A stretch of 64,000 nt of DNA from Macrostomum lignano. Lineage: Eukaryota. Positions 26,550 through 58,363 of this stretch are shown here, piece by piece (the stretch's first letter is position 1; each line of letters opens with the position of its first letter). The position numbers were made by a program, and so were the translations under genes. Under the pieces are notes generated by a model. That model was given only the letters and a program-made list of their open reading frames with translations, was not told the origin of the DNA and made no database searches. Location: positions 1-64,000 of the forward strand of contig NIVC01000498.1 of assembly GCA_002269645.1 (NCBI GenBank), given 5' to 3'.

Positions 26550-27275
26550 ATCTGGGAATGCCAAAGCCGTCACAAGTACAGCCAACTGATATGTAAATGG
26601 TGTTTAACACCAAGGGCCCACGGAAAGCATATCAGTTTAAATCCTGTTACAGTGGCACCATTATCATTCAAAATTTGGAAAGCACCATAGTTTTAGAAAT
26701 TTTAGACTGATAATTAGCAGCCAATAGCTGAAGCAGATATAAAAAAGCTAGATAAAATAATAATGAGCTCTATAGTTAAATTCAGGCACAAACAGCAGCT
26801 TATCCTTAAAGCTAATACGAGCTGAGCACATTGTTGCTACACTTGCAAGTAGTGGCTTGATTAAAAAAATCTTTTTTACTTCAAATAATCAAATTTGTGC
26901 TTAGCGAACAAACTAAACTATAAACTGAAGCAATTCAGCTGTAAGAAAAGAATATTAACTACGAAGTTCTTTATTCTAGTTCCATTAAAGTGCACTCACA
27001 AATAAAAGTGCGAATTATAGTATACTTTAAATTTGAGCTCATGATTTCAAAGTTCAAAGTTTGAAAGATTAAAAGTTTAGACGTCTAGAAGCATTTCGTC
27101 GTCATCATCCTGAGCCGGCTGGACAGGCTGCCGCTGCTGCGGAGCCGGCTGCTGCTGCTGCTGCTGCGGAGCCGACTGGTACTGGTTCTGCTGCTGCTGC
27201 TGCTGCTGCGGAGCCGACTGGTACTGGTTCTGCTGCTGCTGCTGCTGCTGCGGAGCCGACTGGTACTGGTTCTGC

Positions 27276-30200
27276 TTCTTTTTCTTTTCTTTTTCTTTTT
27301 CTTCAGGGCTCCTCCGTATCCGGCTCTGCCGATCTAGAGGGGGGCAGGCGCCCCATGCTGCGAAGTAGGCCGATGATGGCCTCCGGGGACTCCATCAAGT
27401 CCTCGGAGGCGAGCCCGTGGACTGCCCGGTAGCGGTCGCCACAGGGGCAGTCGTGTAGGATGTGGCGCACCGTGTCCTCCGCGCCGCAATCGGGACAGGC
27501 AGCGGAGTCCGCGATGCCAAGCCTGTGGCGGGTGCTGAAGTTAATCATACTGGCGCCAGCGCGGAGCTGGTTTATCAGCACGTGGAGGCGGCGTGGGAGG
27601 TGGGCCGGTGGTGGTTTGGCCGGTGCCGCGTAGTCGGCGTCCATGGCCCGGCGGCGGCGGCGGAGGGCTGTCCTAGCCGCTTGTAGCTGGAGCGGCACGT
27701 GTTGTTGGTCGAGGGCGGCCGCTTCCGATGCCGCTTTGTCGGCCTCCTCGTTGCCCCCCAGACCGCAGTGGGCTGGGACCCAACGGAAGGTGACCGTGCG
27801 GTTACCGGTCGTGAGAGGGAGAAGAAGGTCCCAACAGTCCGACGCCACGCTGTCAGTTTGGGCCAGAGGGCCGGCACTCAGGGCCTGGACCGCGCTCAGG
27901 CTGTCGGTAGCGATGGTGACAGACGGGGGGGCATCGTTGGAGAGAAGGAGCCTAAGGGCCTCGCGGATGGCGACCAGCTCCGCCGTAAAGCTGCTGCACC
28001 AGGCTCCGGCGGGTACGCAGTGGCGGGTACGCAGTGGCGGGTGCCAGGAACCTCCCATTGAGCGATGGCCGCTCCCCCGCCGTTCCGCGAGCCTTCGCCG
28101 ACGGACCCGTCGGTCCAAATGACGCACGGGCTGGCGGCCAGATCGGCGACGGCGGGGCTGACGCGCTCCAGCTTCTCGAGCGCCGTCATCTGGCGGGAGA
28201 CCAGGGCGGTGAGAGAGGTGTCGAACTCAACCGTCTCCGCCCCTTCGGCATCCCAGGGTGGCGGGCCAAGGTGGCGAGCCGCGCGTGGGAGACGGTCGAG
28301 CTCGCAGCCGCTGCAGAGCTCCTCGGCGGATCTACGCCAGCAGCCCCTGTGGGGGCGGTTGGCATCCAAGGCCGCTCCGGGTTGGCGGCTACGCTCTTCG
28401 CCGACGTCGCCTGCCCCGTCGACCCGGTGCGCGTCAGGCGCCGTTCTGGCCTGAGCTGCGTAAGTACGGTTCTTTAGGCGAGGTCGCGTGGTCTTGGTGG
28501 CGATGGTGTGGGCGGGAGTGTCCGCCTGTAGCCGCGCCATACGCTCGCGCAGCATGCTGGCGCGCTCCAACGCGACATGACTGACCGGGGGGAGCTCTGC
28601 GATACTGAGAAGTCGGTCGGTGTGGGTGGTTTGGACGCACCCTGTGATGAGCCGCGCACAGGCGTTTTGTTGTCGTTCAATCATGAGTCGGGTGCTCGGG
28701 CTGCTCCCGCCAGCCAGATTCCGCTGCCGTAGTCGGCCACTGAGCGCACGGTGGCGGTGTAGACCGCTCGAAGGGTGTCTTGAGTTGCGCCCAGTTGGCG
28801 GTGAGCAATGGCCTGAAGGGGTCGTCTGCGGGCGGCCATGCGGCGGCGAATGTCTTTGGCGTGTTCGGCAAAGCCGAGATGGTCGTCGAGTTTCACCCCA
28901 AGGAAGACTGGGTGGGGCTCAAAGGCCAGTTGTTTGTTGCCGATGCTGACATTGAGCCGAGCCTTGCCTCTATTTTCCGCTGGGCTGAGGCTGAAAATGC
29001 TGTAGCTGCATTTGCCTGGGCTCAGCAGCACTTTCCAGCGCTCGCACCAACGTTGGACCGCGTCGAGAGCCGGTTGAAGTTTGCTCGCGCAGTTGGCTAG
29101 CTTGCGGTCCAGGGCCAGCAGGGCGCTGTCATCGGCGTAGAGGCTGGTCTCGACCTCCGGGGCGGCTTCCGCGATGGCCTTTGGCAGGTCGTTCACGTAA
29201 ACCAGCCAGAGGAGCGGGGCGATGACGCTCCCTTGGGGCAGTCCCTCGCGAAACACTCGCTCCTTACTGGTGGCGCTGCCGAAGCGGACCTTTGCGCGTC
29301 TGTCATTGATGAAACTGTTAATCCATCTGAGAAAGCAGACGGGGACGCCGAGTTCGCGCAGCTTACAGATGAGGGCCTTGCGCCAGACCCTGTCGTAGGC
29401 CCTCGAGAAGTCAAGCAGGCAGAGCACTGCTCGTTGAGCCTGCGGGTCCTCTAGTCCGTCGAAGATTGCCTGGGCGATGCGAGCGATCTGCTCTTCGCAC
29501 GATCGGCCCTGGCGGAATCCAGCCTGCACCGAGCTGAGCATCCCGCGGTCTTCGAGGTCGTGGCGCAGGCGGAGGTAAACCATTTTTTCGGCGACTTTGG
29601 CTATGCAGCTAGTCAGGGCCACTGGGCGATAGCTGCCGGGGTCATCCGCGCGTTTTCCGCGTTTGGGTATCGGGATGATGATGGCCCGGCGCCACTGATG
29701 CGTTTGTTAATGAGATTCAGGAGCCTGTTCTCGCTGCGGGCCGGGAGGCGTTTGAGCATCTCGTTTGTCACCTCGTCCGGGCCTGGGCTCTTTCTGGACT
29801 TAAGGGAGCGGATGGCGGAGCGGAGTTCGGTGATGTTGAACTCCTTGCACAGGCCTGATCTGGCGGTTGACGTGTGTGCGCTACATACTGTGCGCATGGC
29901 GGCGAAGGCGTCGCGGTTGATGCTGCGGTCGTCTTTGTGTCGTTTGATGCGGGAGACCTCCGCGTAGATAGCGCAAAATGCGTTAGCTTTGTCGCGGTCA
30001 GTTGTGAGCGCCTTCCCCGGTCTGCCGCGGGCCTCGTCGGCAGGTAGCACCAGCGCGCAGTTGCTAGGCGGAGGTGGCGGGTCTCCTCTCATCGCTCTGG
30101 TCAGCGCAAAGAGGTCGCTGTTGACGTTCAGCTCGGCGACGCGCTGGTTCCAGAAGTTGGCTTTCTCCGCTTTGATGGTCGCGTCTGCCACGCGTCTGGC

Positions 30201-32140
30201 CGTGTGGTACGCGCTGAGGTCTTCCGGTGTTTTGGAGCGCTCCGCTTGCTTTCTGGCGCTGCTGCAGTTCCTGCAGGCCTCGGTGCACGCATCCGTCCAG
30301 AAGGGTTTGCCTCGCCTCTGTCGACATCCACGCGGAATGGAGCCGGCGGCCGCCGTGAGAATCGATTGACAGAGACGCTGGTGGTCGGCGTCAATCCGCG
30401 AGCCAGAGGTGGCTGAGGACGGTTTCAGATGGTCTTCTGCGCGGTCGAGCTCGGCCTTGAAGGACGTCCAGTCGGCTTTGGCGAAGCACCATTTCGCTCT
30501 ATGTTGTTGCTTGGCGGTCGTTTTGGCCTTAGTAAGGGTGAAAACGATGGGCAGGTGGTCGCTGCCGAGGTCTTCAATAGTGCGCCAGGATGTCTTGAGG
30601 GCTGTGGCTAGGCCACTGGTGCACCAGGTGGTATCCGGGCAGCTGAGTCCGCCGGTCGCCGGGTTGGTACGGGTGTGCGTGGCGTCCCGGTTGCAGAGGT
30701 GTAGGCTTTTGCGAAGCGCCCATTCCTCGATGCTGGCGCCCCGATCGTCGTCGGGCTGGTGGTGGTCCCAGCTCCCGTGTCCATTAAAATCACCCGCTAC
30801 GATGGATTTGTTGGCAGTTGGGATGTCGTCCCATTTTGGTTGCCAAAGCTCTTGGCGTTGGTTGCTATCTGGGGGGGCGTAGACCGACACGAGCTTGATG
30901 GCACCGGCCCCCGGGATAGCGATAGTGCAAGCGGTGAGGTCGAGCTGAGCGTGGTCGTTGCTCCATGGTTCGTTGAAGGCGATGTCCTTGCGGACCAGGA
31001 TCATAACGCCTCCGCGGCCGGTAGCGCACTGGATTTTTTTGTGGATTTTTTTTGGGTTATGGCTGCTGTCCGGCCGGGCGTCGACAACGGTCGGTCTTGG
31101 CGCCGGGGTGTCTGCAGGGCGGTTGGTCGTGCGCTCCTGCTCCTGCGTCTGTTGTTGGTTGGACCTGGCGGATTCTTGGCAACATGGGCCGTGGAAGTCG
31201 GCTCTGTAGGCTTTCGTGCTGGGGAGTTGGCTGCATTTGAGGTGCAGCCACTCCTTGCAGCCTTGGCACTGGACACTATATCCCCGGCCGGTCGGGCGGG
31301 AGCAAACAGGGCATTGCCAGGTAGAGGAGGAGCGAGCGCTAGCACTGGCGCCTTGGATTGCTTTAGTTGCTGCCGGTTTCGACTGTTCGGGGCTTGCCGA
31401 GGGGTCCGGGGTGCGGTCCGGTGGAGCGGAACGAGGCTCAGGCCATGGGCGGTTCCGTTCGCTACAGGCAGTTCGTCCGCTGCGGCAACCGGGGCACCAT
31501 CTTGCCTTCTCCTCCGGCCATCTGAGGCGGCATCTCGGGCGAGGTGGGAGGCGCCCGCCGTCTGCCGAGAGCGGGTTGTTGTTCGTAGCGGCAGCCCCAT
31601 GGGCCGTGGTGGTCGCGGCGATGGTCGGTTGGTCGAGGAGGACCTCAGAATCGGCTTTCGGCAGTCCGTCCTTGCGCGCTGCCACACTGTACCCGTGCGG
31701 CGGTTGGAAGGTGGCGCCAGGGCGGAGTTTAGTCTCTTGGAGAAGGACCGCGCAGGGGCGCAGCTGGGCTAATCTCTCGGCTAGCTCCGTGCGACGGGCC
31801 TGCAATCCATTACAGTTGAATTGAAGGACCTGGAGCTCTGGGCCGGGTTTGGAGCTGCGCCTGTGCTGTCTCCTACTCCGCCTGGGGTGGGGGTTGGGCG
31901 CGTCGTGGACCGCGTCTCCTCCCCTCAGCCGCAGGACCGTATTGATATTTCCGTCCATTTCTGCCTCATCGTGTCTGGCAGTGGGGACGTGGGCTGGGCC
32001 AAGATGTTGATAGTTGCAGCATCCCTGATGGTTGCGACACTTAGTCACCCGCGTGCAGCGGGCGTCCAGGGGCCCCTCGTGGAGGAGGTCGCTTGCCACA
32101 GGAAGGTGATGGCCTTCCTGCACCATGATCGTCTGGTCCC
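27276..32140 (-). mobile_element. LINE D: Ingi/I-group-like non-LTR retrotransposon (leader-VLRLRGG-APE[PHD insert]-RT-RNase H)
   Basis: APE (LQFNCNG, LLQETKL, GDFNGH, SDHLP), RT (GLPQGS, YADD), RNase H (WVPAHCGLGGNEEAD), C-terminal CPDC...H...C; (GAAAAA)n tail; 11-bp TSD actggttctgc at 27265-27275 and 32141-32151; several frameshifts. Confidence 0.92.
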
Positions 32141-32388
32141 ACTGGTTCTGCTGCTGCTGCTGCTGCTGCGGAGCCGACTGGTACTGGTTCTGCTGCTGCT
32201 GCTGCTGCGGAGCCGACTGGTACTGGTTCTGCTGCTGCTGCTGCTGCTGCGGAGCCGACTGGTACTGGTTCTGCTGCTGCTGCTGCTGCTGCGGAGCCGA
32301 CTGGTACTGGTTCTGCTGCTGCTGCTGCTGCTGCGGAGCCGACTGGTACTGGTTCTGCTGCTGCGGAGCCGACTGGTACTGGTTCTGC

Positions 32389-35300
32389 TTCTTCTTCTTC
32401 TTCTTCTACGCAGCCCCCGCGTCGCCGCTGTCCGGCGGCTGGGGGGGAGGGCGACCTGCAGGCCGCCCCATCATCCTCAGATACCGGCAGATTCCGCCCG
32501 CGTCGTTGAGGTCGAGAGGGTGAGCAAGGCGGGCGAGTCTCCGCGTGGACACTGCTGCAGGAGGTGCTCTTCTGTGTCTTCGTCTCCGCAGTCCGGACAG
32601 AGCGGAGTCTCGGTAAGGCCGATACGGTAGCGGGTGGCCGCGCAGGCTGTGCTGCAGCCGGCCCTCAATTGGCAAACCGCCACCGTCTCGCCACGAGTCA
32701 GGCCGCCGTAGCGCTTCCAGGGCGAGCTACGGTTCAAGAGCTTGAGATCGAGGTGTCGCCTGGCTCGTTTGATGGCAGCCCTGGCGGCTTCGAAGGCGAT
32801 GGGCTGGTCCTGCGTCAGGTCCGAAGCCCGGTTCGCCGCCTTGTCGGCTCTTTCGTTGCCATCGACGCCGACGTGGGCCGGCACCCAGGTAATGCGGACC
32901 GGGCGAGCTTCTTGACTGAGCAGGCTCCACACCAGCTGTCCCATGGGCTCGCGTTGGTCAGCTGGCCCGCGCTGCAGGGTGAGGATGCCCGCCATGCTGT
33001 CCGTGAGAATGTCGATGCTGCCCCCGTGTGGTTGCTGGAGCTGTAGGCAGCGGCGGATGCCTAGAGCTATAGCCGCTAGCTCCGCCGTCGTGCTGCTGCA
33101 GACGGAGCCAGCGGCTGTCGTGTGTACTTCGCCCACAGGAGGGTGTGCAGGACGGCCGCGCCACGGCCGTCCCGGCAGCCGTCCGTGGCGCTGCCGTCAG
33201 TCCAGATGACGATATCGTGTTGAGGTCTGGATTCCAGGGCGTTGATGGCTCTCTCCCGTCTGATGCTGTCCGGCACTTTGCGGCCGCAGGTGACCTGCAG
33301 GCTGGTGTCGAAGCTGACTTCGCTGGGTGACTGCCATGGCGGCTCGGGCATCGGGAAGGGGGCGCGCCTCCCCGCTGGCTCGAGGGCGTTGATGCCGAGC
33401 TCCAGTGCGGCGCGCCTCCAGCAACCACGGAAAGGCCTGCGGTAGTCGCTCTCCAGCAGGACCCGGTCATCCACCGGGTGTTGCTCCGTAGCCACGCCTC
33501 GTGAGCACGGGATTTCAGGCGGGGCGGCAGGGTCTAGCGGCAGTCTGGTGCACCGGGACCTCCCGGGCAGCCTCAGAGCCCGTTCCCGCAAGGTCGCCGC
33601 TCTCTCCAGGATCAGGTGTCCGATGGGCGGCAGGTCTGCGGCCGCGAGGAGCGCCCTGACGTTCGTGGGCTTAATGCACCCCGAGATGATCCTGGCGCAG
33701 CAGAACTGTTGCCGTTCGATGAGAAGCCTGCTGCTCGGCGCCGCAAAGGCACCCCAGATTCCGCACGCGTAGTCGGCAATAGCACGCACGGTGGCGACGT
33801 AGGCAGTGCGGAGGACGTGGAAGGAGGCGCCGCCGCTACGAGTCGCCAGGGCGGCGAGGGGCCGTCGGCGGACTGCCATGCGGCGGCGGATATCCGCCAC
33901 ATGATGTTGGAACGTTAGCTGGCCATCAAGTTTGACGCCGAGGAAAGTCGGGTGGAGCTCAAACTGCAGAGGCTCGCCGCAGATGCTGAGGTGCGGGCGA
34001 ACTTTCCCATTGGTCTCGTTGGGTGCCAACGAAAAGGTCGTGAAACAGCACTTGTTGGGGCTAAGTTCGACCTTCCACCGGCGGCACCATTCAGCGGCTG
34101 CGTCAAGGGCCGGTTGAAGATTGATTGCGCAGCGCTGAAGAGTGGTGGCTGAGCAGAGGATGGCCGAGTCATCTGCGTAGAGGCTGACTGCTGATTGAGG
34201 GGCTGCCCGCGAGATGGCTTCCGGTAGGTCGTTAATGTAGCAGTTCCAAAGCGTAGGTGCGAGGACGCTGCCCTGTGGCAGTCCTTCCCTGAAGCAGCGC
34301 TCGCGGCTGGTGGCAGCGTTCCACTTCACCGCTGCCCTGCGTTGGCAGAGGAAACCGCGGACCCATCTGATGATGCGGCGGTTGATCCCCATGCGGAGCA
34401 TCTTGGCATAAAGCGCTGCTCTCCAAACCCTGTCGTAGGCGCGACAGAAGTCTAACAGGGCAAGAATGCTGCGGATGGGAGGCTGCGATTCGAGGCCGTC
34501 GAAAATATCCTGACATATCCTGGCTATCTGCTCGTCGCAGCCGCGGTGTCGGCGGAAGCCAGCCTGGCAGGGCGTCAGGAGGTTCTTGGTTTCTAGCGTC
34601 CAGTTGAGTCTGGCTAGCACCATACGTTCGGCGCACTTGGCGACGCAGCTCGTAAGCGCGACCGGTCGATAGCTGCTCGGGAGTTTTGGGACCTTCCCCT
34701 TTTTTGGCACTGGGATGATGACCGCTCGGCGCCAGCTGTTCGGCGTGGAGCCGTCTTTCCAGCTGCGGTTGATGAGGTGCAGCAGGCGTTCGTCGATCTC
34801 CGCTGGTAGGTGCTTAAGCATTTCGTTGCTGACGCCATCCGGGCCGGCCGCCTTACCGGACTTCAATTTACGGAGCGCGGTGCGGAGTTCGCCCAGCGTG
34901 AAGTCGGCCGCGGTCGGGTCTTGGGCCTCCTCTTCGGACTGCCGGAGGCCGCTGTTGGCTTCGTAGCGGATGGCTGCGTCATTCGCCCGTCGTTCAACCC
35001 TGCTAACCTCGGCATAAAGCTGGCAGAAGAGATTTGTCTTTTCTTTATCGGAGTTGCAGGTGCGCGCCGGGCGACTGCCGGAGGCCGGTCTGCTAATTGC
35101 CGCAGGGTCGCGTCCCGTGGGCGCTTCGCCGCGCATAGATCTGAGCAGCTTAAAAAGGTCAGAGTTGGCATCGAGCGCTTCCGCGCGCTGTTCGAGGTGA
35201 TCGCGGCGCTCTTTTCTAATGACCTTGGCGGCTTGGTGACGGGCTCTGTTGAAGGCTGTAATGGCCTCTTGGGTCTGAAGTTCCTCAGCTTGGGACCGGG

Positions 35301-36965
35301 CAGCTTGGGTTTCCGCGCAAGCATTTGAGCAGGCTTCGGACCAGAATGGGGCCCGACGTCCCGCCGTGCTGCCTCTCGGGATGCTCTTATGTGCTGCCTT
35401 CAGGATCATGCTGCTGAGCGCTTCGGCCTCCTGGTCAATGGTCATGGCGTTCGCCGCTGACCCAGTAGGGTTGGGCTGTTGGGCGCAATGGTTGGCCTGG
35501 AGTTCCGACTTGTAGGTTGTCCAGTTCGCTTTGCGATAGTTCCAGCGGGGGGGGCCTCGTTTATGCACTGGACGGGGCGCCGCGGCGTTGAACAGGATCG
35601 GGAGGTGGTCGCTACCGCAGTCTGGTCCAGTCCTCCAGCTGCGTGTGACCGTTTCGGCCAAGGAGCCGGAAACGCAGGTAATGTCCGGGGTTGACCGTTT
35701 GCCGGTGGCGGGGCTAGTCCTGGTATGAGCATTGCTGTTGCAGATAGCCAGCCCATTTCTGGTTGCCCATTCCTCGACGCGCTGTCCTCGCTGGTCCTCT
35801 TCCATGTGGTAATCCCAAGCGCCGTGGGCGTTGAAGTCGCCTCCGATAATAGTGCGATTATTGGTCGGGATGCGCTCCAGTGGGTTGTCCTCGGTGTTTT
35901 CGCCGGCAGATCTTTGGGCGCTGACTGGCGGTATGTATATCGAGACCACCAACAGGTCCGGTTGATGAGGCAAACTGAGCCTACACGCTGCGATGTCGCT
36001 TCCGTCGGTGGCCGGCCCCCTCTTGACCGTGCTGTAGCAGATGTTGGAGCTCACTAGTATCATCGCGCCCCCGCGGCCTGTGATTCTGTTTGCGTTCTTA
36101 GGGTGGATCTGGCTGGGCTGTGGCGCCGTGACCTCTGGCTCGTCGTCGGTCTGGGTGAGTGGTTGGCCTGGGTCGGTGCCGCGTCTGAGGCATCGGCGGC
36201 GCCCAGAGCAGCCGCTGCACCAGTTCGTCGGGTTGGCCGGCTCGCGGCGCTTGCAGGTTGGGCCTATGTGTGTCGTCGCTTGCGATGTATTCCCGGTTGC
36301 ACCATCCCGTGCCGGTTCATTGTTATCCGGCGTCGGATCCCGGTTGGTGCAAGCGGTGCGGCGGGATCGGCATCCGGGGCACCACTGTTCTCGGGTGTCC
36401 GGGAGTCGAGTGCGGCAGCGAGCAAGTTTTTTGGGCGGTCCGGCGCTGCCGTGTTGTTGTTGTTGCGTCGGTCGGGCCTCGTCCGCCGGTGCCGTTGATT
36501 GTACCGGGGCGTCCGTGTCCGGGTACGGAGTCCCGTCGCTCCTGGCGGCGACGACGTAGCCGGGTGGTGGGCGGAAGTCGTCAGAGGCCTTGAGCTTCGT
36601 CTCCTGCAGGAGAACGACAGCGGGGCGGTCGATGGTCAGCCGATGGGCCAGCTCCGTGTAGCGGCTACGAATGCCATTGCAGTTCAACTGCAAGAACGGG
36701 AGCTCTGGGCTTGGCTGATCGTCGACGGTCGACTTGCGCTTCTTGCGTCGCGCTCTGGTCGGCCTGCTGTCACTGCCTCCGCGAAGCCGTAGGACACGGT
36801 GGAGGTTGTCCTGGGGTTGCTCGGTCGAAAAGGATGAGGATGATCTGCGATGGTGTGGACCATTAGTCATTCCCGAGCTATCGCTCAGGTCCAGGGGCTC
36901 CCGGGGTCCTGGCCGATTGCTCATGTCGGCCGTTTCCCCTTCTCGGAGGATGTCCACAGGCCCCC
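32389..36965 (-). mobile_element. LINE C: Ingi/I-group-like non-LTR retrotransposon (leader-VLRLRGG-APE-RT-RNase H)
   Basis: ORF 33076-37431 holds APE and RT (GLPQGSVLAP, YADDS); RNase H in ORF 32477-33136; (GAA)n tail; TSD actggttctgc at 32378-32388 and 36966-36976. Confidence 0.93.
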
Positions 36966-37206
36966 ACTGGTTCTGCTGCTGCTGCTGCTGCTGCTGCGGA
37001 GCCGACTGGTACTGGTTCTGCTGCTGCTGCTGCTGCTGCGGAGCCGACTGGTACTGGTTCTGCTGCTGCTGCTGCTGCTGCGGAGCCGACTGGTACTGGT
37101 TCTGCTGCTGCTGCTGCTGCTGCGGAGCCGACTGGTACTGGTTCTGCTGCTGCTGCTGCTGCTGCGGAGCCGACTGGTACTGGTTCTGCTGCTGCTGCTG
37201 CTGCTG

Positions 37207-40200
37207 TTGTTGTTGTTGTTGTTGTTTGCGCTGAAGGCGCGAACATCCTAGTTTGCATCGTTCTCTTTCCACTTGGTGCGGTACCAGGCCCAGTACCGGA
37301 GCGCCACCTCTGGATGCTCGTTGAGGTGGTGCAGCTCCGTGGGCCCGTCCAGCCTTCGCCTGATCTCCGTGGCCGGGCACTGACTGCTCACATGTACGAC
37401 CGTTTCTTCTTCGGTCCCGCACGCCGGGCACATTGCGTCGGTGGTTCTGCCTATCCGCCGGCAGTAGGCCCTCAACTCCAGCGAGTGGCCCGTGCGGAAT
37501 CGAATAAAGCTAACCGCCTCCGCCCTGTTCTTGTAGGCTGGGTGCCTGGCCGTACCGAGGTGGCCATAGGTGTCTTTCGATCTTTCGTGCGACCAGTACC
37601 TGCTGTTCTGGCTGGCCGCCTTCGTCTCGGCTGCCAGTCGTCTGCGGACAACGCTCGCCAGTACTCCGGCCTCCGCCTGCGGCAGTGTCGTCGCGCCGCC
37701 GGCCACTTCGTCCGCGGCCTCGTTGCCTTCCAGACCGCAGTGGGCCGGCGTCCAGCAGAGCGCAATCACTCGTCCGGTCTGGCAGGTCCTCGATAGCAGC
37801 TGGCGGATCTTTGTCGCGATCGGATTGCGGCCTCGGCCCTGCACTGCGAGGAGCCCACTCTTGCTGTCGGAAGCTATTAGCGCAGTTCTCCACGCCGGCT
37901 GCTCGCTGAGCCATTCCACCGCTAGCTCTAGGGCGGTGAGCTCGGCTTGCAGCGAGGAGGCCGGCTGCCCGGCTGCCCTCCGGATGCTGATCTGATCTCC
38001 GACCTGCTCTCCTGTTAGACGCCCGTTCCGATAGATGACCGCACCGCTGCCGCCGCCCTCCCTCCGCACCGATCCGTCCGTGAAGATAGTGATGTCCGGG
38101 TCTGGGCTGGCCTGGTTGATCTTCGCTTGGGCCATCTCAAGGTTTCCGGCGCGCGACTCTTTCCTGGCATCGTCGGTGGATACGAAGAAGCTGATGTTAT
38201 CTCTCCAACTCTGCCACGGGGGGAGGTCCGACATGTCCTCTAGCCTAGCCACCTTGGCTAGACCGGTGTTGGCGAGACCCTTCCTGGCCTGGGCTCTCCA
38301 GCCCAGCCTCTTCAGCCTTTGCCGGGTCTGCTGGGTGCCGAGGCGGTATCTTGGCGAGCTGTGCTCGAGCCTGAGCCATCGGTCCAGTTTTGCGCTCCAT
38401 ATCACCTCGCTCTGCTCCCGGATCGACATCATCCCGCTTTCGCAGCGTAGGGCCTCAACCGGGTGGTGGCGACCGCGCCGGTAATGATGCGTTCCGCGCT
38501 GTGCTGCACCACTTCGAGCTTACGCCAGGCCGCGCAAGTGAGCCACGGCATCCAGGCGCAGGCCCCATACAGCATCTTGCTCCGGATGAGGGCAACGTAG
38601 GTGTTGCGGATCAGCTCGGCCTGCCAGCCCCAAGAGCTGCCTGCGAGGCGCCGCATTAGGTTGAGGCGGTTCCGGCAGCTGTGGATCACATTGTCAGCGT
38701 GCGCTGTGAACCTCAGCTGTCTGTCAAACGTAAGCCCGAGGAACTTGGGCTGCTCAACCCATTGCATCGTCTGCCCTTAAAGCACGACGTTCGTGGCACC
38801 GGCCCTCTGCGGGGTCATCGCCGGGTCACTGGAGAAGAGGGTGAGCGAGCATTTCCCCGTGGCAACCGGTAGCAGCCATGCTTTGCTCCAAGCCTCCAGG
38901 GTGTCAACCGCCTTCTGCTGGGTGGACAAGGCCTCCACTACTCTTCTGCTGCTGGTCCAGGTGGCTAGATCGTCCGCATAGCCGCTCACCTGCAGGTCCG
39001 GGATAGCGTCAAGTTGCCTGAGAAGGTCATCGATGAAGACGATGAAGAGCAGCGGCGAAAGCACGGATCCCTGCGGCAGCCCTTGCCGGAAAAGTTCCCG
39101 CTTGCTGTCCACGTCGCCGACCCGGACGCACGCCAGCCTGTTCGCTAGCCAGCTCTGTATCCATCTGACCGTTTTTGGGCCAATGCCAGCTTTAAGCAGC
39201 TTGATCAGCAGCCCGTCACGCCAAACCTTGTCGAACGCGCGCGCAAAGTCGAACAGCGCCAGAACCGTTAGTTTTCGCTCTTGGAAGGCGTCGTCAATCG
39301 ATTGGGACAGCCGGAGCAGTTGATCCTCCGTGGACCTGCCCCCTCTGAACCCCGCTTGCGCTTCGCTGAGACCGCCGGTGGACTCCAGAACATGCTTGAT
39401 TCGGTTCGCAAGCACCCGTTCCATCCACTTACCTAAGCTGGAGGTTAGGCTAACCGGGCGGTAGGATCCTATGTCCTTGGCGGGCTTTCCGCTCTTAAGA
39501 AGAGGTATGATGCGGGCCGTGCGCCAGTTCTGCGGCGTGAAGCCGCAGTCATACAACCGGTTAAACAGCTTCAGGACCTCTTGGAGCGCTTCACGGGGGA
39601 GCGCCTTCAGCAGCTTCGGGTGCAGTCCGTCCATTCCGGCGGCTCTGTTGGCGTCCATGCTTTGCAGCGCTGCTAGCAGCTCGTCCATGGTCATGGCTTG
39701 ACAGTCCTCGGTGGTGGGGGTAGCGGCGCTTTGTCTCAGCCGGGCGTTAATTTCTCTGCGTGCCCATCTGTGACTGGCCCTAACGGTGGTGGCGCTGACC
39801 TTGGCGTATACCTTCGCAATGATGTTGGCCTTGGCTCTGTTCGACTTGTACCTTTTGCCTTCGTACTCCAGGATCTGGTCCCCGCTTTGGGGGGGCGTCG
39901 CGCCGTTCAGTTGCTTCAGCAGCGACCACATCTTGTCCGCCGTCGCATTGCTATCCAGCTTGTCCCTCCATCGATCCCTCTTATTCTCCTGCTGTTTCTG
40001 CTTGATCTGCCGGTCCAGGTGCTTCCAGTCCTCAGACTCGATACCCTCACTCATTCTGATGTTGTCTCTCTCCGCCGTCAGGAGCTGGACTTCCTCGTCG
40101 ATGAACTCAGCGTTCCTGGTTTTCCTGGCCACCATGCCCACAGCCTTGCGGGCCGCCTTCACCAGGCACGTTCGCAGCTGTTCCTCATGCTCCGAGTTGC

Positions 40201-42620
40201 TGAGAGCCATAAGGTTCGCGCTCTTTAGGTGCTCTCTGACCAGACGCTGGTACAGCGGCCAGTCCGCCTTCTTCCAGTTCCAGCGCATGATCTTCCTGGT
40301 GCTGGGGACCGGGTCTGCGTTCTCTGCCCTGCGGCTGATGATGATCGGCAGGTGGTCGGAGCTTAACCTGTTAGCTGTCCGCCATTCCCACTGGTCTAGC
40401 TCCGCTTGCGGGACTATGGTCACGTCCGGCGAAGACCTGTGTTCACCGTCCCAGCTGGTTCGGGTGGTGGATCCATCGTTCAGCGCCGTTAACATCTGCT
40501 CGTCCATCCAGTCGGCGAGCTCCTCGCCTCGCCTGTCTCTGGGGAGTTGTTGTCCCACAGCTCATGGTGTGCGTTCCAGTCGCCGGCCAAGAGCAGGTTC
40601 TCGCCGCCTGGGATTTGCGCCAGCTCGGCTGCTGCCATGTAGCACGTGGCTTGGGGCGGGATGTAGATGTTGATCAGCAGCAGTTGTTCTAGACCTTGCC
40701 CGCTGTTTGCTTCAAAGTATAGCCTGACGCCTAGCATTTCTAGCGGCGAGTTGGTCACTGGCGCCTGTATCCTTTCGAACCGCAGCCCGTGTCTGATGAT
40801 GGTCACCAGGCCTCCCCCTCTCGCGCTGTGGTGTTGCCTGTGCCGGTTGCGGTCCGCACGTAGCACCGTGTAGCCTGGCCAGGCTAGCAGCTCGTCCTCG
40901 GCCTTCAGCTTGCTCTCTTGCAGCATAATGACATCGGCATCTTGCTGCCTCACGAGCTCTTTGAGTTCCGGCTCCTTGGCCTTGAAGTGGTCACAGTTCC
41001 ATTGTATGATGGTGATCTTGCTGGTCTTCGGCTCTCCGCTGCACCCTGCCGGCCTCTGTTGTCCGTCCGCTATCTGTGCCTGACCAGCGGCGGGTGGTGG
41101 GGGTGGGAGCGCTGTGCCTTTTGGCATGGCTGCGGCCTCGTGGGCGCATTCGTTGCATGTCCAGCCCCGGTGTTTCAGACTTTCGATTTGCCTCCGGGTG
41201 TAGGTCCTGTGGCAGCAGGACCAGTGAACCTTCTTGCCGCAGTTCTTGCACTCAGCCCCTTGTCCTCTTCTCCTGAATCTCTTGCATTCCGCACACCGGC
41301 CTGCCCTCTCAGCGGCGAGCGGTCTCTCCGAACTGTTCCGGGCTAGGCTGGGCCGTTGGGGTGGTTCTGTCTCCCCGGTGTTATCGGCTGTTCTGCTTCT
41401 GTTGTTGGCGGCGCAGGGCTGGCATATCCAGCTAGCTCCTTCGTCAGGTCTCCAGCGCGAGATGGTCGTGCAGGCGCGATGGAAGACACGGTGACATTGT
41501 GCGCACGGGGTGCCGCTGTGGCCGGCCCTGATCTTGCGATCGCACTTGCCGCAATAGCTCTGCTCTGCCTCTGCGGGGCCACCTGGTCGAGCGTCGGGGT
41601 TCCGCCGGATTTTTTAGTTTTAGGATTGGGTGGCGGATTCTCCCGGCTGTCCTCGACTTCGGTGAGTCTCCTCCCCACCGGCGAGTTGATGGTACTGGTT
41701 TGCTCCTCTCCGAGCCTCTCCAGGCCGCTCCTATTCGCTGTCACGTCCTCGTCAGCCCTCGGTATTTCGATGCTAACTTCCGCAGCTCCTGCTGTCCGGC
41801 CTTCCATCCCGTCCAAGGCGGCCGTGGCCATCTTCACCGCTTGGCGCAACCTCGCAGACATCGCCCCGCTGCACCCCGTACTCCTGTTGAAGGGTCTGAT
41901 GTTGTCCTTCTTGATCCATGACGCCTGCCCAGAGCCAAACCAGCTGACCGGCACGTCATTGCTGCCATGCGCAATGCGGCTGAGTGCCGCTGCCGCGTCA
42001 CACGCTTGCAGGCGCTCGGCCGGCCACCAGGCCCAGCCCCTGAGCTTGGCCCAAATGATGTTGTTCCCGCTTCTCGGGTCTTCCTCTTGCTTGTCCTGAG
42101 TCACGGTAAGCTTGCTCTTCGCGTCACTCGCCGTGCCACGCCCGCCTGGTTGCTTGCCCCACTTGGGCTTGTCCTCTCCTGGCATCCTGCCGGGCGTGCT
42201 GGCGGTTGGCCGGCTTCCTTGGCAGCATGGGCCTGTCCAGTCTCCAGCCTTCTCCGTCGCGTAGAATCTACCTCTGGGCAGGCCGCTGCACTTGAGATGG
42301 AGGTGGTTTCCGCAGTCCTTGCAGCGTGGGCCCCGGCCCGTGGCTCGTTTGCAGCAGAGCCCACATAGGGTGCTCCGAGCCATGGGTGGCCCCGGGTTGC
42401 TCTCAACGTCGCCTGCTCTGAGCAGCAGGGGCCTGCTGTCAACCTTGTAGGGCCTGAAGCCGCTGCCTTTTCCCCTGTCCGTGCCCATACTCCGGTGATG
42501 CGACCTGCTCCTCCGATGCTGGGTGTTCATATCTTGGATGTTCGGCTTCAGTATGCTTCCTTTCGTGCCTAGCCGTCCTCGACTAGGTTCCACAGCACAC
42601 CGCTTGGCGGTATGGAAGCT
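37207..42620 (-). mobile_element. LINE B: Ingi-like non-LTR retrotransposon (2A-PHD-PWWP-PHD-APE-RT-RNase H)
   Basis: GDVESNPGP; PHD-like Cys/His fingers; WAKLRGWAWWPA; APE (IQWNCD, LQESKL, GDWNAHH); RT (GLPQGSVLSP, YADD); RNase H (FTDGS, WTPAHCGLEGNEAAD); (AAC)n tail; inserted in a CAG run; four frameshifts. Confidence 0.93.
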
Positions 42621-42627
42621 GTGCTGC
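42555..42627 (-). ncRNA. Putative HDV-like self-cleaving ribozyme at the 5' end of LINE B
   Basis: Manual fold: P1 GCAGCAC/GUGCUGU (G.U first pair), P2 GCUUCC/GGAAGC, P3 ACC/GGU with loop GCCAAGC, GG after P1, P4 CCUAGUCG/CGGCUAGG, J4/2 CGAA. Confidence 0.6.
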
Positions 42628-43146
42628 TGCTGCTGCTGCTGCTGCTGCTGCGGAGCCGACTGGTACTGGTTCTGCTGCTGCTGCTGCTGCTGCTGCGGAG
42701 CCGACTGGTACTGGTTCTGCTGCTGCTGCTGCTGCTGCGGAGCCGACTGGTACTGGTTCTGCTGCTGCTGCTGCTGCTGCGGAGCCGACTGGTACTGGTT
42801 CTGCTGCTGCTGCTGCTGCTGCGGAGCCGACTGGTACTGGTTCTGCTGCTGCTGCTGCTGCTGCGGAGCCGACTGGTACTGGTTCTGCTGCTGCTGCTGC
42901 TGCTGCGGAGCCGACTGGTACTGGTTCTGCTGCTGCTGCTGCTGCTGCGGAGCCGACTGGTACTGGTTCTGCTGCTGCTGCTGCTGCTGCGGAGCCGACT
43001 GGTACTGGTTCTGCTGCTGCTGCTGCTGCTGCGGAGCCGACTGGTACTGGTTTTGCTGCTGCTGCTGCTGCTGCGGAACCGGCTGGTTCTGATTCTGCTG
43101 CTGCTGCTACCGCTGATGATGCTTGATGCTGCTGCTGCTGCTGCTG

Positions 43147-44305
43147 TTGTTGTTGTTGTTGTTAGTTGGCCCAAACGCGCCCAGGATCCATGCAGAACCT
43201 GGCCAGCGCGACCAAACCATCAGGGTAATCGGACAAGTTGCTGAGGGAGAGCGGAGCTCCAATGAAGCGACGGCGGGCGGCCTCGAGAGCAGGGCACGCT
43301 GTCCAGTGCTCAAGGGTGTCTGGTTCGAGAAAGCACCTTTGGCACGTCGGATCCACCGTGGGGTCCATGAGGGCGCGGAAGGCTCCGAAGAGGCTGGAGT
43401 GGCCGGAGCGCAGCCGGGCAAGAAGGACAGCGTCTTTGCGGTTAGTAATAAGCCGACGTTCCTTTTCGGCGTCGGCGGAGGCATAGGTGAGACGAGATCT
43501 CGCGTGGGTGACCGGCTTGTCAACCAGAGTGCGGCGGATCACCGAGGCGGCAGTGGGAAAACTGATGCTGGGGCGCGGTGCTTCATCGGCGTTGGCGGCA
43601 GCGGAGTTAGCAGCGCGGTCCGCGAGTTCATTGCCCGGAATGCCGACATGACCCGGGACCCACAGGAGAGCGCGGCAGTTGTGCGGGAAGCGGAGGGAAG
43701 AGGCCAGGCGGCTGAAGGGACGCTGAAGGGCGCGCAGAAGAGACTGACTGTCAGAGCAGATGATGGCAGGGCGCGTGGGGTGCGAGCGGAGGTAGTCGAG
43801 GGCTAGGACCAGAGCGCGGAGTTCCTCTTCAAAGGAGCTGGTGTAGCGGCTGCCAGCGGACGTGCGGGCTTCCACGGTCGTCGGGACTGCCGGGTCTCCG
43901 ATGGTGACCACAGCGGCCGCCCCGCCAGCCTCGGAGCCGCCGGCCGCCGAACCATCGCAGTAAATGACGAGCTCAGCCGGGTGAGACCGGATGACGTCGA
44001 GAGCGGCAAGACAGCGCTCCAACGGGGCGTGGTGGCCGGAGGCAAAGGATTGTCAGCTAGGATCGCCGGAAGATGTTGGTCCAGCCAGGGGCATGGGAAG
44101 GCCGGTGTGAGCGGCAGACGCGGCGTGAGATCAATGCCAAGGCCATTGGCAAGCTGAGCCGAGCGGAGTCTCCAGCTACTGCGGGCGAGCCGGTGTTGCA
44201 CGGTGCCCGAGAGGGCGATGGCGCGAGGATGGTCGTTGGGCAGCCTGAGCGCGCGTTCCCTGGCGATGAGGCAAAGGCGGTCGCTGGTGTTCCTGTAGCT
44301 GCCGA
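43147..44305 (-). mobile_element. LINE A: 5'-truncated RNase H-bearing LINE
   Basis: YCDGS...ELRAL...SDSQS...WVPGHVGIPGNELAD, then CQRC...EHWTAC; (AAC)n tail; flanked by a ~76-bp direct duplication of host sequence. Confidence 0.9.
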
Positions 44306-45325
44306 TGCTGCTGCTGCGGAACCGGCTGGTTCTGATTCTGCTGCTGCTGCTACCGCTGATGATGCTTGATGCTGCTGCTGCCGCTGCGCAGTCAGCGCCG
44401 GGCAACGCCGGACTGGATGCGGCCCTGGCACTAAGGTAGCAGTAAACTGTTGAATCAGAGAGAATTAACGTAACTATGAGTACATCAAACAAATAAGCTT
44501 GCAGCTCATAAAACAAATAGGGAAAGGAAATTAAACTTACTATTGTTCCTTGGCCGGCGCCCTCCACGGCGCTGCCCTGAGTTTGAGTTCGTGGTGTAGT
44601 TGTTCACTATCTTCATACTCGTACGAGTATTTGCTGGCCGGTGCTGTTGCTTAGCTCAAGTATTAATGACGAAGAAAACAAATACGAGCATAATCTCAGA
44701 GCTCTTGCCTCTTGGCTTGCCTCATTGCGATCTTTTATAGGGGCGCACGAGCGCAGAATTGAACCGGTGGGCCGGTATTTTTTGTTTGATTCGGTAATTT
44801 ATTTAATTAGTCTTTAATGACTTTGATCCAGCAGGTGCAGCACGTATCAGATTTAAGTTTAAAAGGTGAGCTGCGAGGGAATTGAACACTGAGCTATATT
44901 GATCAGCTTTACAATGAGGCGACCTGCCGCTACTTCTTAAGCCGGTGGGTTTCAGAGCTAATTACGGCCAGGTAAAAACGTAAAGATTGCCAAACTTAAT
45001 TGATCAATTATCAAATTCAATCATGAATAAGTAGAAAAATTGGCTTTTAAATTTAATTGAGCAATTATTAAATTAAATCATGGTCAGGTAGAAATGTTTA
45101 GCTTTCAAACTTAATTGATCTGTTATAAAATTTCAGCCGCTGCCCCACCCCAGCCTAATTACATGTACGAGCTACTCTAGCTGTCTGGTGCAGCTAATAA
45201 AATAAAAGATATTTTATTCGGATGATCTCAAAGTTTGTCTAGCTGCAACTCAAACCGTCTCCCAACCTTTTTTATTTCATTTTTAAACTGCTATTTTCCA
45301 GTATTTTCTGTTCTCTTTGTAACAA

Positions 45326-58024: not shown

Positions 58025-58363
58025 TGCAACGCCAGTGACGCCTCTGTATGATAGGCAACTGTGTTGCCTTTGGGTAACAATATTTTTTGCTGTAGCTGCT
58101 TTTCCAGTCGTTGCAGAGCGTACTGCTTGCACCGCGACACCTGGAGCCCCGCTACAGAAGTAGTACGTTTGCTCTGAAAGAAGGCAAGTTTGGTTGAATT
58201 TGTCAGTTTGAAAATTCTACACAAGCACGTTTTATTGGTACATAAGCCCCAGAATTAAAATGAGAATTTGATTCCTAGCCCCCCCCCCCTAAGAATTATT
58301 TTCATTTTAAAGGATTCGTCCCTTGCTTATTGGCCACCCCGAAGGGGGGCGCTAGATTGCTAG
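58025..58363 (+). mobile_element. Helitron 3' end (hairpin plus CTAG|T), inserted in Gypsy pol
   Basis: Inverted homolog of 51842-52162; ends ggccaccccgaaggggggcgctagattgctag|t. Confidence 0.75.

What the first reader, a model, noticed from the sequence alone, without database searches (positions are those of the whole stretch)
27077..44740. Array of four different LINEs all targeted to one CAG-rich coding minisatellite
Four distinct RNase H-bearing LINEs (17 kb in total) lie head to tail on one strand, each separated only by units of the same 42-bp repeat, and none is nested in another. C and D share the exact 11-bp TSD GCAGAACCAGT in different repeat units; A and B sit in CAG runs. Known: target-specific LINEs exist for rDNA, telomeric repeats, SL-RNA genes and microsatellites. 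Inferred: a multi-family guild specialised on a protein-coding polyQ-type repeat, which I do not recall being described.
Basis: partly seen in the sequence, partly recalled or inferred. Interest (0 to 1): 0.92.

Follow-up and report, generated by a model that had tools for sequence, protein, structure and literature searches.

The report
Four LINEs stacked in CAG-rich minisatellite
Four different jumping genes (LINE retrotransposons) of a Macrostomum flatworm have all landed, in the same direction, in the CAG runs of one short 42-bp tandem repeat. This points to CAG-repeat targeting, a target type I did not find among the microsatellite targets listed in the papers I read, but not yet to a guild dedicated to one protein-coding gene.

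Summary
On the minus strand, 27077-44740 holds four distinct APE-RT-RNase H LINEs: A is 5'-truncated, and B, C and D appear full length. They lie head to tail, none is nested, and only units of one 42-bp repeat, (CAG)7-AAC-CAG-TAC-CAG-TCG-GCT-CCG, separate them. C and D share about 58% amino-acid identity in RT and sit at the identical nucleotide position with the same TSD, CAGAACCAGT. A and B carry (CAA)n tails joined in phase to CAG runs. In all four, the tail-target junction falls in or at the edge of a CAG run. The window has no other (CAG)>=4 run and no other copy of these LINEs.

A Macrostomum lignano gene model (A0A1I8I0H8) carries a 97.5%-identical C-family fragment next to a D-like copy, and the flanks there read as polyQ and R5S4. 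That suggests a second locus in CAG context.

More distant relatives with (GAA)n or (GA)n tails sit at diverse sites, seven of eight not microsatellites, so the clade as a whole is not site-specific. The "coding polyQ" status of the repeat is unproven: the Q frame is closed upstream by two stops and has no homologs.

Best reading: LINE families that prefer CAG runs, with the minisatellite acting as a multi-copy landing pad. Side finding: B carries an N-terminal 2A motif, and C and D carry a ubiquitin-tail motif (VLRLRGG) at the equivalent place.

The parts
44306..44760 (-). 5' part of the gene-like host unit. It has a TATAAAAG box (about 44733-44726), a candidate ATG at 44616, a candidate GTAAGT...CCTTAG intron at 44540-44431, and degenerate first repeat units. 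The upstream copy of A's 76-bp TSD lies at 44381-44306.
   Evidence: Sequence read; the splice enumeration shows that the frame cannot be fixed; TSD.
43145..44305 (-). LINE A. It is 5'-truncated, retaining the post-RT region and RNase H. The stop codon TAA abuts a (CAA)5 tail, which is joined in phase to (CAG)n.
   Evidence: Pfam RNase_H E=3.2e-12; junctions; exact 76-bp TSD.
42624..43144 (-). Target DNA between A and B. It holds the downstream copy of A's TSD (43138-43063) followed by 11.5 units of the 42-bp repeat.
   Evidence: TRF (42630-43115, 97% matches).
37205..42623 (-). LINE B, apparently full length. ORF1 (42593-41343) has a 2A motif, LLLRAGDVESNPGP (DVESNPGP at 42410-42387), a PHD-like zinc finger and a PWWP domain. 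APE is at 41127-40489, RT at 40558-38777 and RNase H at 38432-37248. The 3'UTR is about 25 nt and the tail is (CAA)6. There are at least 2 frameshifts.
   Evidence: Pfam; 2A motif, unique in the six-frame translation of the window; frameshift sites; junctions.
36966..37204 (-). Target DNA between B and C: 5.5 units of the 42-bp repeat, ending in the 5' TSD copy CAGAACCAGT of C (36975-36966).
   Evidence: TRF (100% matches).
32388..36965 (-). LINE C, apparently full length with a single ORF. It starts with extra G residues. A 64-aa leader ends in VLRLRGG (RLRGG at 36789-36775). The APE domain is split by an insert carrying two WCxGC motifs, followed by RT and RNase H. The stop codon TAG abuts a (GAA)6 tail. 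There are 2 frameshifts.
   Evidence: Pfam; ubiquitin-tail match; frameshift near 33130 and a second near the 3' end, seen by comparison with P0093.
32141..32387 (-). Target DNA between C and D: the 3' TSD copy of C (32387-32378), 5.4 repeat units, and the 5' TSD copy of D (32150-32141).
   Evidence: TRF.
27275..32140 (-). LINE D, apparently full length with a single ORF. It starts with GGG. A 75-aa leader ends in VLRLRGG (RLRGG at 31931-31917). The APE domain is split by an insert carrying a PHD finger, followed by RT and RNase H. The stop codon TGA abuts a (GAAAAA)n-GAAG tail. There are 3 frameshifts, one caused by a 14-bp tandem duplication at 28008-28042.
   Evidence: Pfam.
27077..27274 (-). 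3' end of the host unit: the 3' TSD copy of D (27274-27265), 3 repeat units, a degenerate unit, and stop codons in all three frames. The Q frame ends ...DDDDEMLLDV-TAA at 27079-27077. An AATAAA lies roughly 150 bp downstream.

Best explanation
The locus is a short CAG-rich 42-bp minisatellite in a gene-like unit of a Macrostomum flatworm. The species is M. lignano or a very close relative. Four different families of APE-RT-RNase H LINEs hit it independently by target-primed reverse transcription.

Shown:
- Each element is bounded by a target-site duplication.
- Each has its own simple-repeat tail: (CAA)n in A and B, (GAA)n-type in C and D.
- Each lies with its sense strand on the CAG strand.
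- In every case the tail is followed directly by CAG. For B, C and D the pre-insertion site reads ...CAG|CAG...; A's junction lies at the start of a short CAG run.
- C and D, two separate families, used exactly the same first-strand and second-strand positions: CAG|CAGAACCAGT|ACCAGT.

Inferred:
- The first nick is made in the CTG strand at or near a CTG|CTG step.
- The endonucleases prefer CAG/CTG-run DNA. Their APE domains carry unusual zinc-finger-like or PHD inserts that may contribute to this.
- Short pairing between the RNA 3' end and the nicked strand may add to the preference. This could be the terminal AG of (GAA)nG, or a (CAA)n(CAG)n read-through end.
- The minisatellite offers at least 25 copies of the preferred site within 1.3 kb. 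It therefore acts as a multi-copy landing pad and collects several families.

The copies present are decayed (1-3 frameshifts each). The target preference is most likely for CAG runs and the CAG-AAC edge in general, not for this one gene.
For: - Anatomy, TSDs and tails.
- Domains.
- Four distinct families.
- No other copies of these LINEs in the window, and no other (CAG)>=4 run in the window.
- Second locus: P0093 is UniRef A0A1I8I0H8 from M. lignano. It holds a 5'-truncated C-family copy, 97.5% identical over 203 aa, directly preceded by QQQQQQQ. A D-like copy follows it, and the end of that copy reads RRRRR-SSSS, as expected for (GAA)5(CAG)4.
- One copy of the related family E lies inside a (GGA)n/(CAG)6 microsatellite (L005). 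Another has the TSD CTGAACCAGGA, which matches the window's CAGAACCAGT at 8 of 10 positions (L003).
- The TRAS1 endonuclease is the only solved endonuclease-domain structure that C matches outside its RT region.
- Known microsatellite-targeting APE LINEs behave in the same way (PMC3812793).
Against: - Only one locus was seen as DNA. The second is inferred from a chimeric gene model by back-reading amino acids: R could be CGN, S could be TCN, and Q could be CAA.
- Relatives at 43-69% RT identity are not CAG-specific. Their TSDs include AGATCGGGGGTGGC, AATAACGTTCTTTGAA, TAACCGTGA, GCACGATATCCG and about ATGRCATGTATG. They share little more than an AG| junction and often an AAC a few bases in.
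- The site used by C and D therefore also fits a weak generic motif, AG|N1-3AACC.
- No endonuclease assay and no genome-wide flank table could be made.
Confidence: 0.6

Rival explanations
1. One reading: a multi-family guild specialised on this particular 42-bp protein-coding (polyQ-type) minisatellite. It would be maintained there in the way R1 and R2 are maintained in rDNA.
For: - Four families lie in one repeat, in the same polarity.
- C and D cut at a position defined by the non-CAG part of the unit, CAGAACCAGT|ACCAGT.
- The ORFs of all three full-length elements are in the CAG=Gln frame of the repeat.
Against: - A single locus of about 25 units is too small a niche to sustain four families, unless the unit is abundant elsewhere. 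No such evidence exists: there were no hits in the fetched loci or in JGI metagenome contigs.
- The second M. lignano locus has CAG-type flanks without NQYQSAP units.
- The Q frame is closed by two stops upstream and has no start.
- A search with the Q-frame product found no homolog.
Confidence: 0.12
2. There is no real CAG specificity. The elements have only a very weak nick preference (AG| plus nearby AAC). The cluster would then reflect a structural or chromatin hotspot: CAG/CTG slipped-strand or R-loop-prone DNA supplying nicks, or PHD/PWWP tethering to marked chromatin. Tolerance of insertions in an already dead gene would add to it.
For: - Family E, L001, L007 and L009 insert at diverse sites, most of them non-repetitive, with an AG| junction.
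- The long and variable TSDs (76 bp for A, roughly 24 bp for B) fit pre-existing staggered breaks.
- B ORF1 has a PWWP domain and D has a PHD finger.
- The window is TE-rich, and the host unit is disrupted anyway.
Against: - The other roughly 47 kb of the window tolerates hAT, Ty3/gypsy-type, Helitron and viral insertions, yet holds none of these LINEs.
- C and D have precise, identical 10-bp TSDs.
- All four insertions have one polarity.
- A second locus with C-type and D-type copies lies next to probable CAG runs.
Confidence: 0.2
3. The repeat units belong to the elements as UTR, tail or transduced sequence, or the array is an assembly artefact that joins separate loci through the repeat.
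For: - The 42-bp arrays are nearly identical to each other, so an assembler could in principle mis-join through them.
- LINEs can carry tandem repeats at their ends.
Against: - Excising C or D plus one TSD restores an intact unit.
- The four unrelated elements have different tails and no shared terminal sequence.
- A's TSD is 76 bp of unique, non-unit sequence.
- The outer flanks run on into unique gene-like ends.
- Relatives lack the unit.
- The arrays are only 130-520 bp long, short enough for long reads to span.
Confidence: 0.04

Closest known systems
Microsatellite-targeting LINEs: Waldo (ACAY)n and Mino (AC)n; Kibi (TC)n and Koshi (TTC)n; Dong (TAA)n; Togen (TG)n. Targets are as listed in PMC3812793 and PMC4640811. 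Waldo and Mino in the R1 clade, Kibi and Koshi in the Tx1/L1 group, and Dong in the R4 clade are from my own knowledge; Togen's relation to NeSL is from PMC4640811.
   Same: They insert in a fixed orientation at a defined position of a simple repeat. Their simple-repeat tails relate to the target. Several unrelated lineages use the same class of target.
   Different: The target here is a CAG run and the CAG-AAC edge of a 42-bp minisatellite, which is not among the targets listed in those papers. Four families are seen at one locus. Genome-wide specificity has not been shown. The nearest relatives are not site-specific.
TRAS and SART families in Bombyx telomeric (TTAGG)n, and R1/R2 in 28S rDNA (from my own knowledge)
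   Same: Several different LINE families share one tandem-repeat niche and form head-to-tail arrays separated by target units, with exact shared junctions.
   Different: Those niches hold hundreds to thousands of target copies and are well documented. Here only about 25 units are seen, at a locus that is not telomeric and not rDNA.
APE-type LINEs with an N-terminal 2A peptide (L1Tc/Ingi, CR1, Rex1, L2, Crack; Odon et al. 2013, PMC3708506)
   Same: B carries a canonical GDVESNPGP in the N-terminal leader. About 40 of the 220 retrieved homologs have 2A at the same place, some followed by a PHD finger, as that paper describes. My own knowledge says Ingi is the one 2A-bearing clade with an RNase H domain.
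   Different: B's 2A is in ORF1, which the paper reports as a single exception. C and D have VLRLRGG, the ubiquitin C-terminal tail, at the equivalent position instead of 2A. I found no paper describing that.

Membership tests
APE-type non-LTR retrotransposon with RNase H (I group: I, R1, LOA, Tad1, Ingi, Nimb, Outcast) | N-terminal APE endonuclease, then RT, then RNase H in that order on one strand | tested here: met
   Pfam finds Exo_endo_phos / Exo_endo_phos_2, RVT_1 and RNase_H in B, C and D, and RNase_H in the truncated A.
APE-type non-LTR retrotransposon with RNase H (I group: I, R1, LOA, Tad1, Ingi, Nimb, Outcast) | Hallmarks of target-primed reverse transcription: TSDs, a 3' simple-repeat or A-rich tail, and 5' truncation | tested here: met
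   TSDs of 10-12 bp (C, D) and 76 bp (A), and a CAG-run TSD (B). Tails are (CAA)n, (GAA)n and (GAAAAA)n. A is 5'-truncated.
APE-type non-LTR retrotransposon with RNase H (I group: I, R1, LOA, Tad1, Ingi, Nimb, Outcast) | Placement in a named clade by RT phylogeny against reference elements | not tested
   No reference library such as Repbase was at hand. The nearest full-length database relatives are unnamed at 34-38% identity. 2A plus RNase H hints at Ingi-like elements (PMC3708506), but this is only a lead.
Target-sequence-specific LINE (R1, TRAS/SART, Waldo/Mino, Kibi/Koshi type) | Most genomic copies lie at the same target sequence | tested here: inconclusive
   Six insertions at two loci lie in CAG context: four seen as DNA and two inferred from the protein P0093. 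No Macrostomum genome DNA was reachable.
Target-sequence-specific LINE (R1, TRAS/SART, Waldo/Mino, Kibi/Koshi type) | Fixed orientation and identical junctions or TSDs between independent copies | tested here: met
   Four of four are in the same polarity. C and D have identical 5' and 3' junction positions and the same TSD, CAGAACCAGT.
Target-sequence-specific LINE (R1, TRAS/SART, Waldo/Mino, Kibi/Koshi type) | Specificity shared by close relatives, or shown by endonuclease cleavage in vitro | tested here: not met
   Relatives L001-L007 and L009 sit at diverse sites, seven of eight not microsatellites. The cleavage assay is not testable here.
2A-bearing APE LINEs (Odon et al. 2013) | A D(V/I)ExNPGP motif in the N-terminal leader upstream of the APE domain or in ORF1 | tested here: met
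   B has LLLRAGDVESNPGP, the only such motif in the six-frame translation of the window. C and D lack it and have VLRLRGG there instead.
   The Q frame has TGA and TAG stops within 30 codons upstream of the repeat and no ATG. The strongest GT..AG intron puts the candidate ATG in the poly-Ala frame.
   The Q-frame product found no hit at E<=0.001. This was a low-complexity query in a word-based search, and RNA data were not available.

The most novel reading that the evidence does not exclude
These LINEs may be adapted to land in polyQ-coding CAG runs and be expressed through the host gene. The ORFs of B, C and D run open to their very 5' ends and are all in the CAG=Gln frame. Just before the functional domains each carries a "release" module. 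B has a 2A ribosome-skipping peptide. C and D have a ubiquitin-tail mimic (VLRLRGG) that host deubiquitinases could cut. A fusion started at a host ATG could therefore be trimmed to a native LINE protein. Even without host fusion, a ubiquitin-tail cleavage site standing in for 2A in a retrotransposon would be new.
Probability: 0.12. Interest if true: 0.9.

Novelty: new variant of a known kind. Interest (0 to 1): 0.6.

Why it matters
Target-specific LINEs show how selfish elements find safe havens, and they serve as templates for programmable DNA insertion. A CAG-run preference would have three consequences:
- It would add a trinucleotide, potentially coding, repeat to the known targets (rDNA, telomeres, snRNA, tRNA and SL genes, and di-, tri- and tetranucleotide microsatellites).
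- It would show convergence of four families on that target in a flatworm.
- It would link retrotransposition to polyQ/CAG-repeat biology.

The split APE domains with zinc-finger-like or PHD inserts are candidate specificity modules. The VLRLRGG leader suggests a previously undescribed way for a retroelement to borrow host deubiquitinases.

Tried and rejected
- Exact-protein look-ups of a window ORF, of P0001 and of P0093 found no contig. No Macrostomum DNA beyond the window could be read.
- The Q-frame host product found no homolog.
- An exact scan of JGI metagenome contigs for the 42-bp unit gave 0 hits. It also gave 0 hits in the six related loci held at that point, L001-L006; L007-L009 were fetched later and were not scanned for the unit.
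- An Rfam scan of 26.5-45.5 kb found only chance sub-threshold matches in the repeats and no HDV-like ribozyme. This gives no support for ribozyme processing of a host co-transcript.
- Is the leader of C or D a ubiquitin domain? Only the last 12-15 residues resemble ubiquitin. Pfam found no ubiquitin domain. AlphaFold2 on D's 75-aa leader gave pLDDT 37, so the fold question is inconclusive.
- Are the frameshifts assembly errors? The sites are not homopolymer runs, and one is a 14-bp tandem duplication. They are real mutations.
- An enumeration of GT..AG introns could link the candidate ATG to any of the three frames. The coding frame therefore stays open.
- The first homolog search missed RT relatives at around 50% identity. 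A profile of the C, D, B and L001 RT regions recovered them.
- Literature searches for LRLRGG or a ubiquitin-like domain in retrotransposons returned nothing.

Full report
**What is there**

The window has a G+C-rich island (60-66% G+C) between about 27 and 44.4 kb, in a background of roughly 40%. All long ORFs in the island are on the minus strand.

Pfam shows three APE-RT-RNase H LINEs and one 5'-truncated RNase H-bearing fragment. Reading the minus strand from high to low coordinates, the layout is as follows.

- A gene-like start comes first: TATAAAAG, a candidate ATG at 44616, a candidate intron at 44540-44431, and degenerate repeat units.
- Element A is at 44305-43145.
- 521 bp of target DNA follow.
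- Element B is at 42623-37205.
- 239 bp of target DNA follow.
- Element C is at 36965-32388.
- 247 bp of target DNA follow.
- Element D is at 32140-27275.
- The last 198 bp hold target DNA and stop codons, the last at 27077, with an AATAAA further downstream.

The target DNA is one 42-bp unit, (CAG)7 AAC CAG TAC CAG TCG GCT CCG. It is present in arrays of 11.5, 5.5, 5.4 and 3.1 copies at 96-100% identity.

**The four elements are different**

C and D are sister families with 37%, 58% and 41% amino-acid identity in APE, RT and RNase H. B is about 34% identical to C. A is about 32% identical to B or C in RNase H. There is almost no nucleotide similarity between them.

- B has two ORFs. ORF1 carries a 2A motif, a PHD-like finger and a PWWP domain.
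- C and D have a single ORF.
- The APE domains of C and D are split by an insert of roughly 150-230 aa, by my reading of the Pfam coordinates. The insert carries (R/K)WCxGCRxxxxC motifs, and in D a PHD finger. The same motifs occur in the relatives P0014/L001 and L007.
- In A, C and D the stop codon abuts the tail, so there is essentially no 3'UTR.
- Each copy carries real disabling mutations. One is a 14-bp tandem duplication. The sites are not homopolymer runs.

**The junctions**

C and D have identical junctions...CAGCAG CAGAACCAGT|GGG(element)...GAAG|CAGAACCAGT ACCAGT... The TSD is therefore 10 bp, or up to 12 bp counting the ambiguous AG.

A has a (CAA)5 tail and an exact 76-bp TSD that starts in a short CAG run. 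B has a (CAA)6 tail and lies inside a CAG run. In both, the tail continues in phase into (CAG)n.

In all four the tail is followed directly by CAG. For B, C and D the pre-insertion site reads CAG|CAG. I infer that the first-strand nick was made in the CTG strand at or near a CTG|CTG step.

Removing C or D with one TSD copy restores an intact unit. A's TSD is unique non-unit sequence. The repeats are therefore target DNA, not cargo of the elements.

**More than chance**

No other copy of any of the four families occurs elsewhere in the window. Every (CAG)>=4 run of the window lies in this array. The remaining roughly 47 kb tolerates other insertions: a retroviral-type integrase, a Ty3/gypsy-type RT-RNase H, a Pif1/Helitron-type helicase fragment with RPA-like ORFs, and an endogenous Mononegavirales polymerase fragment.

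By my own arithmetic, four independent hits in 1.3 kb of about 48 kb of non-LINE DNA, all in one polarity, is very unlikely under uniform insertion, on the order of 1e-6. That figure is not corrected for how the window was chosen.

**Which organism, and other loci**

The best homolog of C in the first search was a Macrostomum lignano model, P0001, at 52% identity.

The exhaustive representative search then returned P0093, which is UniRef A0A1I8I0H8 from M. lignano. Residues 1640-1842 of P0093 are 97.5% identical to C. The window is therefore from M. lignano or a very close relative.

P0093 is a chimeric gene model with this layout:
- a 5'-truncated C-family copy, directly preceded by QQQQQQQ;
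- a 5'-truncated D-like copy, 61-71% identical to D;
- after the end of that copy's ORF, RRRRR-SSSS, as expected for a (GAA)5 tail followed by (CAG)4;
- then what reads as the start of a DnaJ-type (J-domain) gene.

This is a second locus with C-type and D-type LINEs in tandem in apparent CAG context. It is read from amino acids in a spliced model, so it is suggestive and not proof.

**Relatives seen as DNA**

A profile search recovered relatives with contigs. Their junctions are listed below.

- L001: RT 47-69% identical to C/D, a (GAA)5 tail, TSD AGATCGGGGGTGGC.
- Family E: five copies 95-97% identical to each other, with (GAA)n tails.
  - L003 has TSD CTGAACCAGGA.
  - L002 has TSD AATAACGTTCTTTGAA.
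  - L004 has a TSD of about ATGRCATGTATG.
  - L006 has TSD TAACCGTGA.
  - L005 lies inside a (GGA)n/(CAG)6 microsatellite.
- L007: a (GA)n tail, TSD GCACGATATCCG.
- L009: a (GA)n tail.

None of L001-L006 contains the 42-bp unit; L007-L009 were fetched afterwards and were not scanned for it. The wider clade is therefore not strictly site-specific. The common denominator is an AG| junction, which gives two bases of possible pairing with the tail end, and often an AAC a few bases inside the TSD. L003's TSD matches the window's at 8 of 10 positions.

This cuts both ways. It hints at a shared motif, AG|CWGAACCAG. It also shows that the site used by C and D could be explained by a weak generic preference.

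**Is the repeat coding?**

All three sense frames are open through the repeat, giving QQQQQQQNQYQSAP, SSSSSSRTSTSRLR or AAAAAAAEPVPVGS. Each stops within 30 bp after it.

- The Q frame has two stop codons within 30 codons upstream and no start codon.
- The strongest GT..AG intron joins the candidate ATG to the poly-Ala frame.
- Another acceptor joins it to the Ser/Arg frame.
- A search with the Q-frame product found no homolog.

"Coding polyQ minisatellite" is therefore not established.

**Leader modules (side finding)**

The ORFs of B, C and D are open to the 5' junction, and all are in the CAG=Gln frame. By my estimate the frame agreement alone is weak evidence, with P of about 0.1. C and D also have their own ATG 14 and 5 codons in, and they begin with extra G residues typical of capped full-length copies. 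These points argue for their own transcription start.

- B has a canonical 2A peptide, LLLRAGDVESNPGP, about 70 codons from its 5' end.
- C and D have VLRLRGG, the C-terminal tail of ubiquitin, about 25 residues before the APE domain.
- These are the only RLRGG and D[VI]ExNPGP motifs in the six-frame translation of the whole window.
- They are the two best ubiquitin matches in the window.
- The close relative P0014 has a 2A, MRAGDVERNPGP, at the equivalent position. About 40 of the 220 retrieved homologs carry an N-terminal 2A.

N-terminal 2A in APE LINEs is known (PMC3708506, PMC3894237). I found no paper on an LRLRGG motif in retrotransposons. Only the tail resembles ubiquitin. The fold prediction for the leader was uninformative, with pLDDT 37. 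No HDV-like ribozyme was found.

**Comparison with what is known**

Microsatellite-specific LINEs are established: Waldo, Mino, Kibi, Koshi, Dong (PMC3812793) and Togen (PMC4640811). Multi-family niches are also established, from my own knowledge: R1/R2 in rDNA, and TRAS/SART in telomeric repeats. The present case works like these.

It would be a new target type, CAG runs, in a flatworm, with four families at one locus. The defining genome-wide criterion is untested, and the nearest relatives fail it.

**Verdict**

- Best explanation (confidence about 0.6): several M. lignano LINE families prefer CAG-run DNA, and the 42-bp minisatellite acts as a multi-copy landing pad.
- A guild dedicated to this particular coding repeat is possible but unlikely (about 0.12).
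- A weak-motif or fragile-DNA hotspot remains a serious rival (about 0.2).
- Travelling repeats or an assembly artefact are unlikely (about 0.04).

Noticed in passing
window 62705-64000 (+), with a 69-bp x 6.4 tandem repeat at 61951-62391 just upstream: An open ORF running off the window end matches the Mononegavirales RNA-dependent RNA polymerase (PF00946, E=3.4e-47) and has a GDNQ motif. It is an endogenous viral element, or a fragment of one.
   Followed up: partly
window 36775-36792 (C) and 31917-31934 (D), minus strand; also P0025 (Cydia amplana LINE) at residues about 96-104: VLRLRGG, the C-terminal tail of ubiquitin, is conserved between two LINE families in an otherwise unconserved leader. 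It sits at the place where relatives carry a 2A peptide. A TLRLRGG also occurs in the leader of a moth LINE ORF1. It may be a deubiquitinase cleavage site.
   Followed up: partly
window 42387-42428 (-): A canonical 2A ribosome-skipping motif, LLLRAGDVESNPGP, lies in the N-terminal leader of B ORF1, upstream of a PHD-like finger and a PWWP domain. 2A in ORF1 rather than ORF2 is reported only as a single exception in PMC3708506.
   Followed up: partly
window about 30700-31700 (D) and 35600-36500 (C), minus strand; also L001 and L007: The APE endonuclease domains are split by inserts of roughly 150-230 aa carrying paired (R/K)WCxGCRxxxxC motifs, with a PHD finger in D. This is conserved across the clade. 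The inserts are candidate DNA-binding or chromatin-binding modules.
   Followed up: partly
window 43145-43170, 32388-32410 and 27275-27310 (-): In A, C and D the stop codon directly abuts the simple-repeat tail (TAA-CAA.., TAG-AAG.., TGA-AGA..). These LINEs therefore have essentially no 3'UTR.
   Followed up: no
window 52509-56260: A 24-bp satellite (TTATCAAGTGCAGTAATCCTTGGT) in about 157 copies at 79% identity.
   Followed up: no
window 25890-26549 (+); 45235-45753, 48552-48983 and 49280-49831 (+): A Pif1/Helitron-type helicase C-terminal fragment lies immediately next to the array. Three RPA-like OB-fold ORFs lie on the other side; REPA_OB_2 is matched by the 49280-49831 ORF. Helitrons often carry this combination.
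   Followed up: no
window 12407-13060 (+); 58352-59402 (-); 7039-9022 (-): Other TE remains are present: a retroviral-type integrase (rve), a Ty3/gypsy-type RT-RNase H, and ORFs that look hAT-transposase-like by eye but have no Pfam hit.
   Followed up: no
P0093 (UniRef A0A1I8I0H8, Macrostomum lignano), residues about 1411-2400: This is a chimeric gene model in which two LINE fragments are fused between unrelated host exons. One is from family C (97.5% identical to the window copy) and one is D-like. The flanks read QQQQQQQ and RRRRRSSSS, and what reads as a DnaJ-type gene start follows.
   Followed up: partly
L004 10001-13570 and 15071-17738; L007 40-3108 and 6900-11890: In the unidentified ENA assemblies holding related LINEs, further LINE copies lie within 1.5-4 kb on the same strand. 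Head-to-tail clustering may be common for this clade.
   Followed up: no
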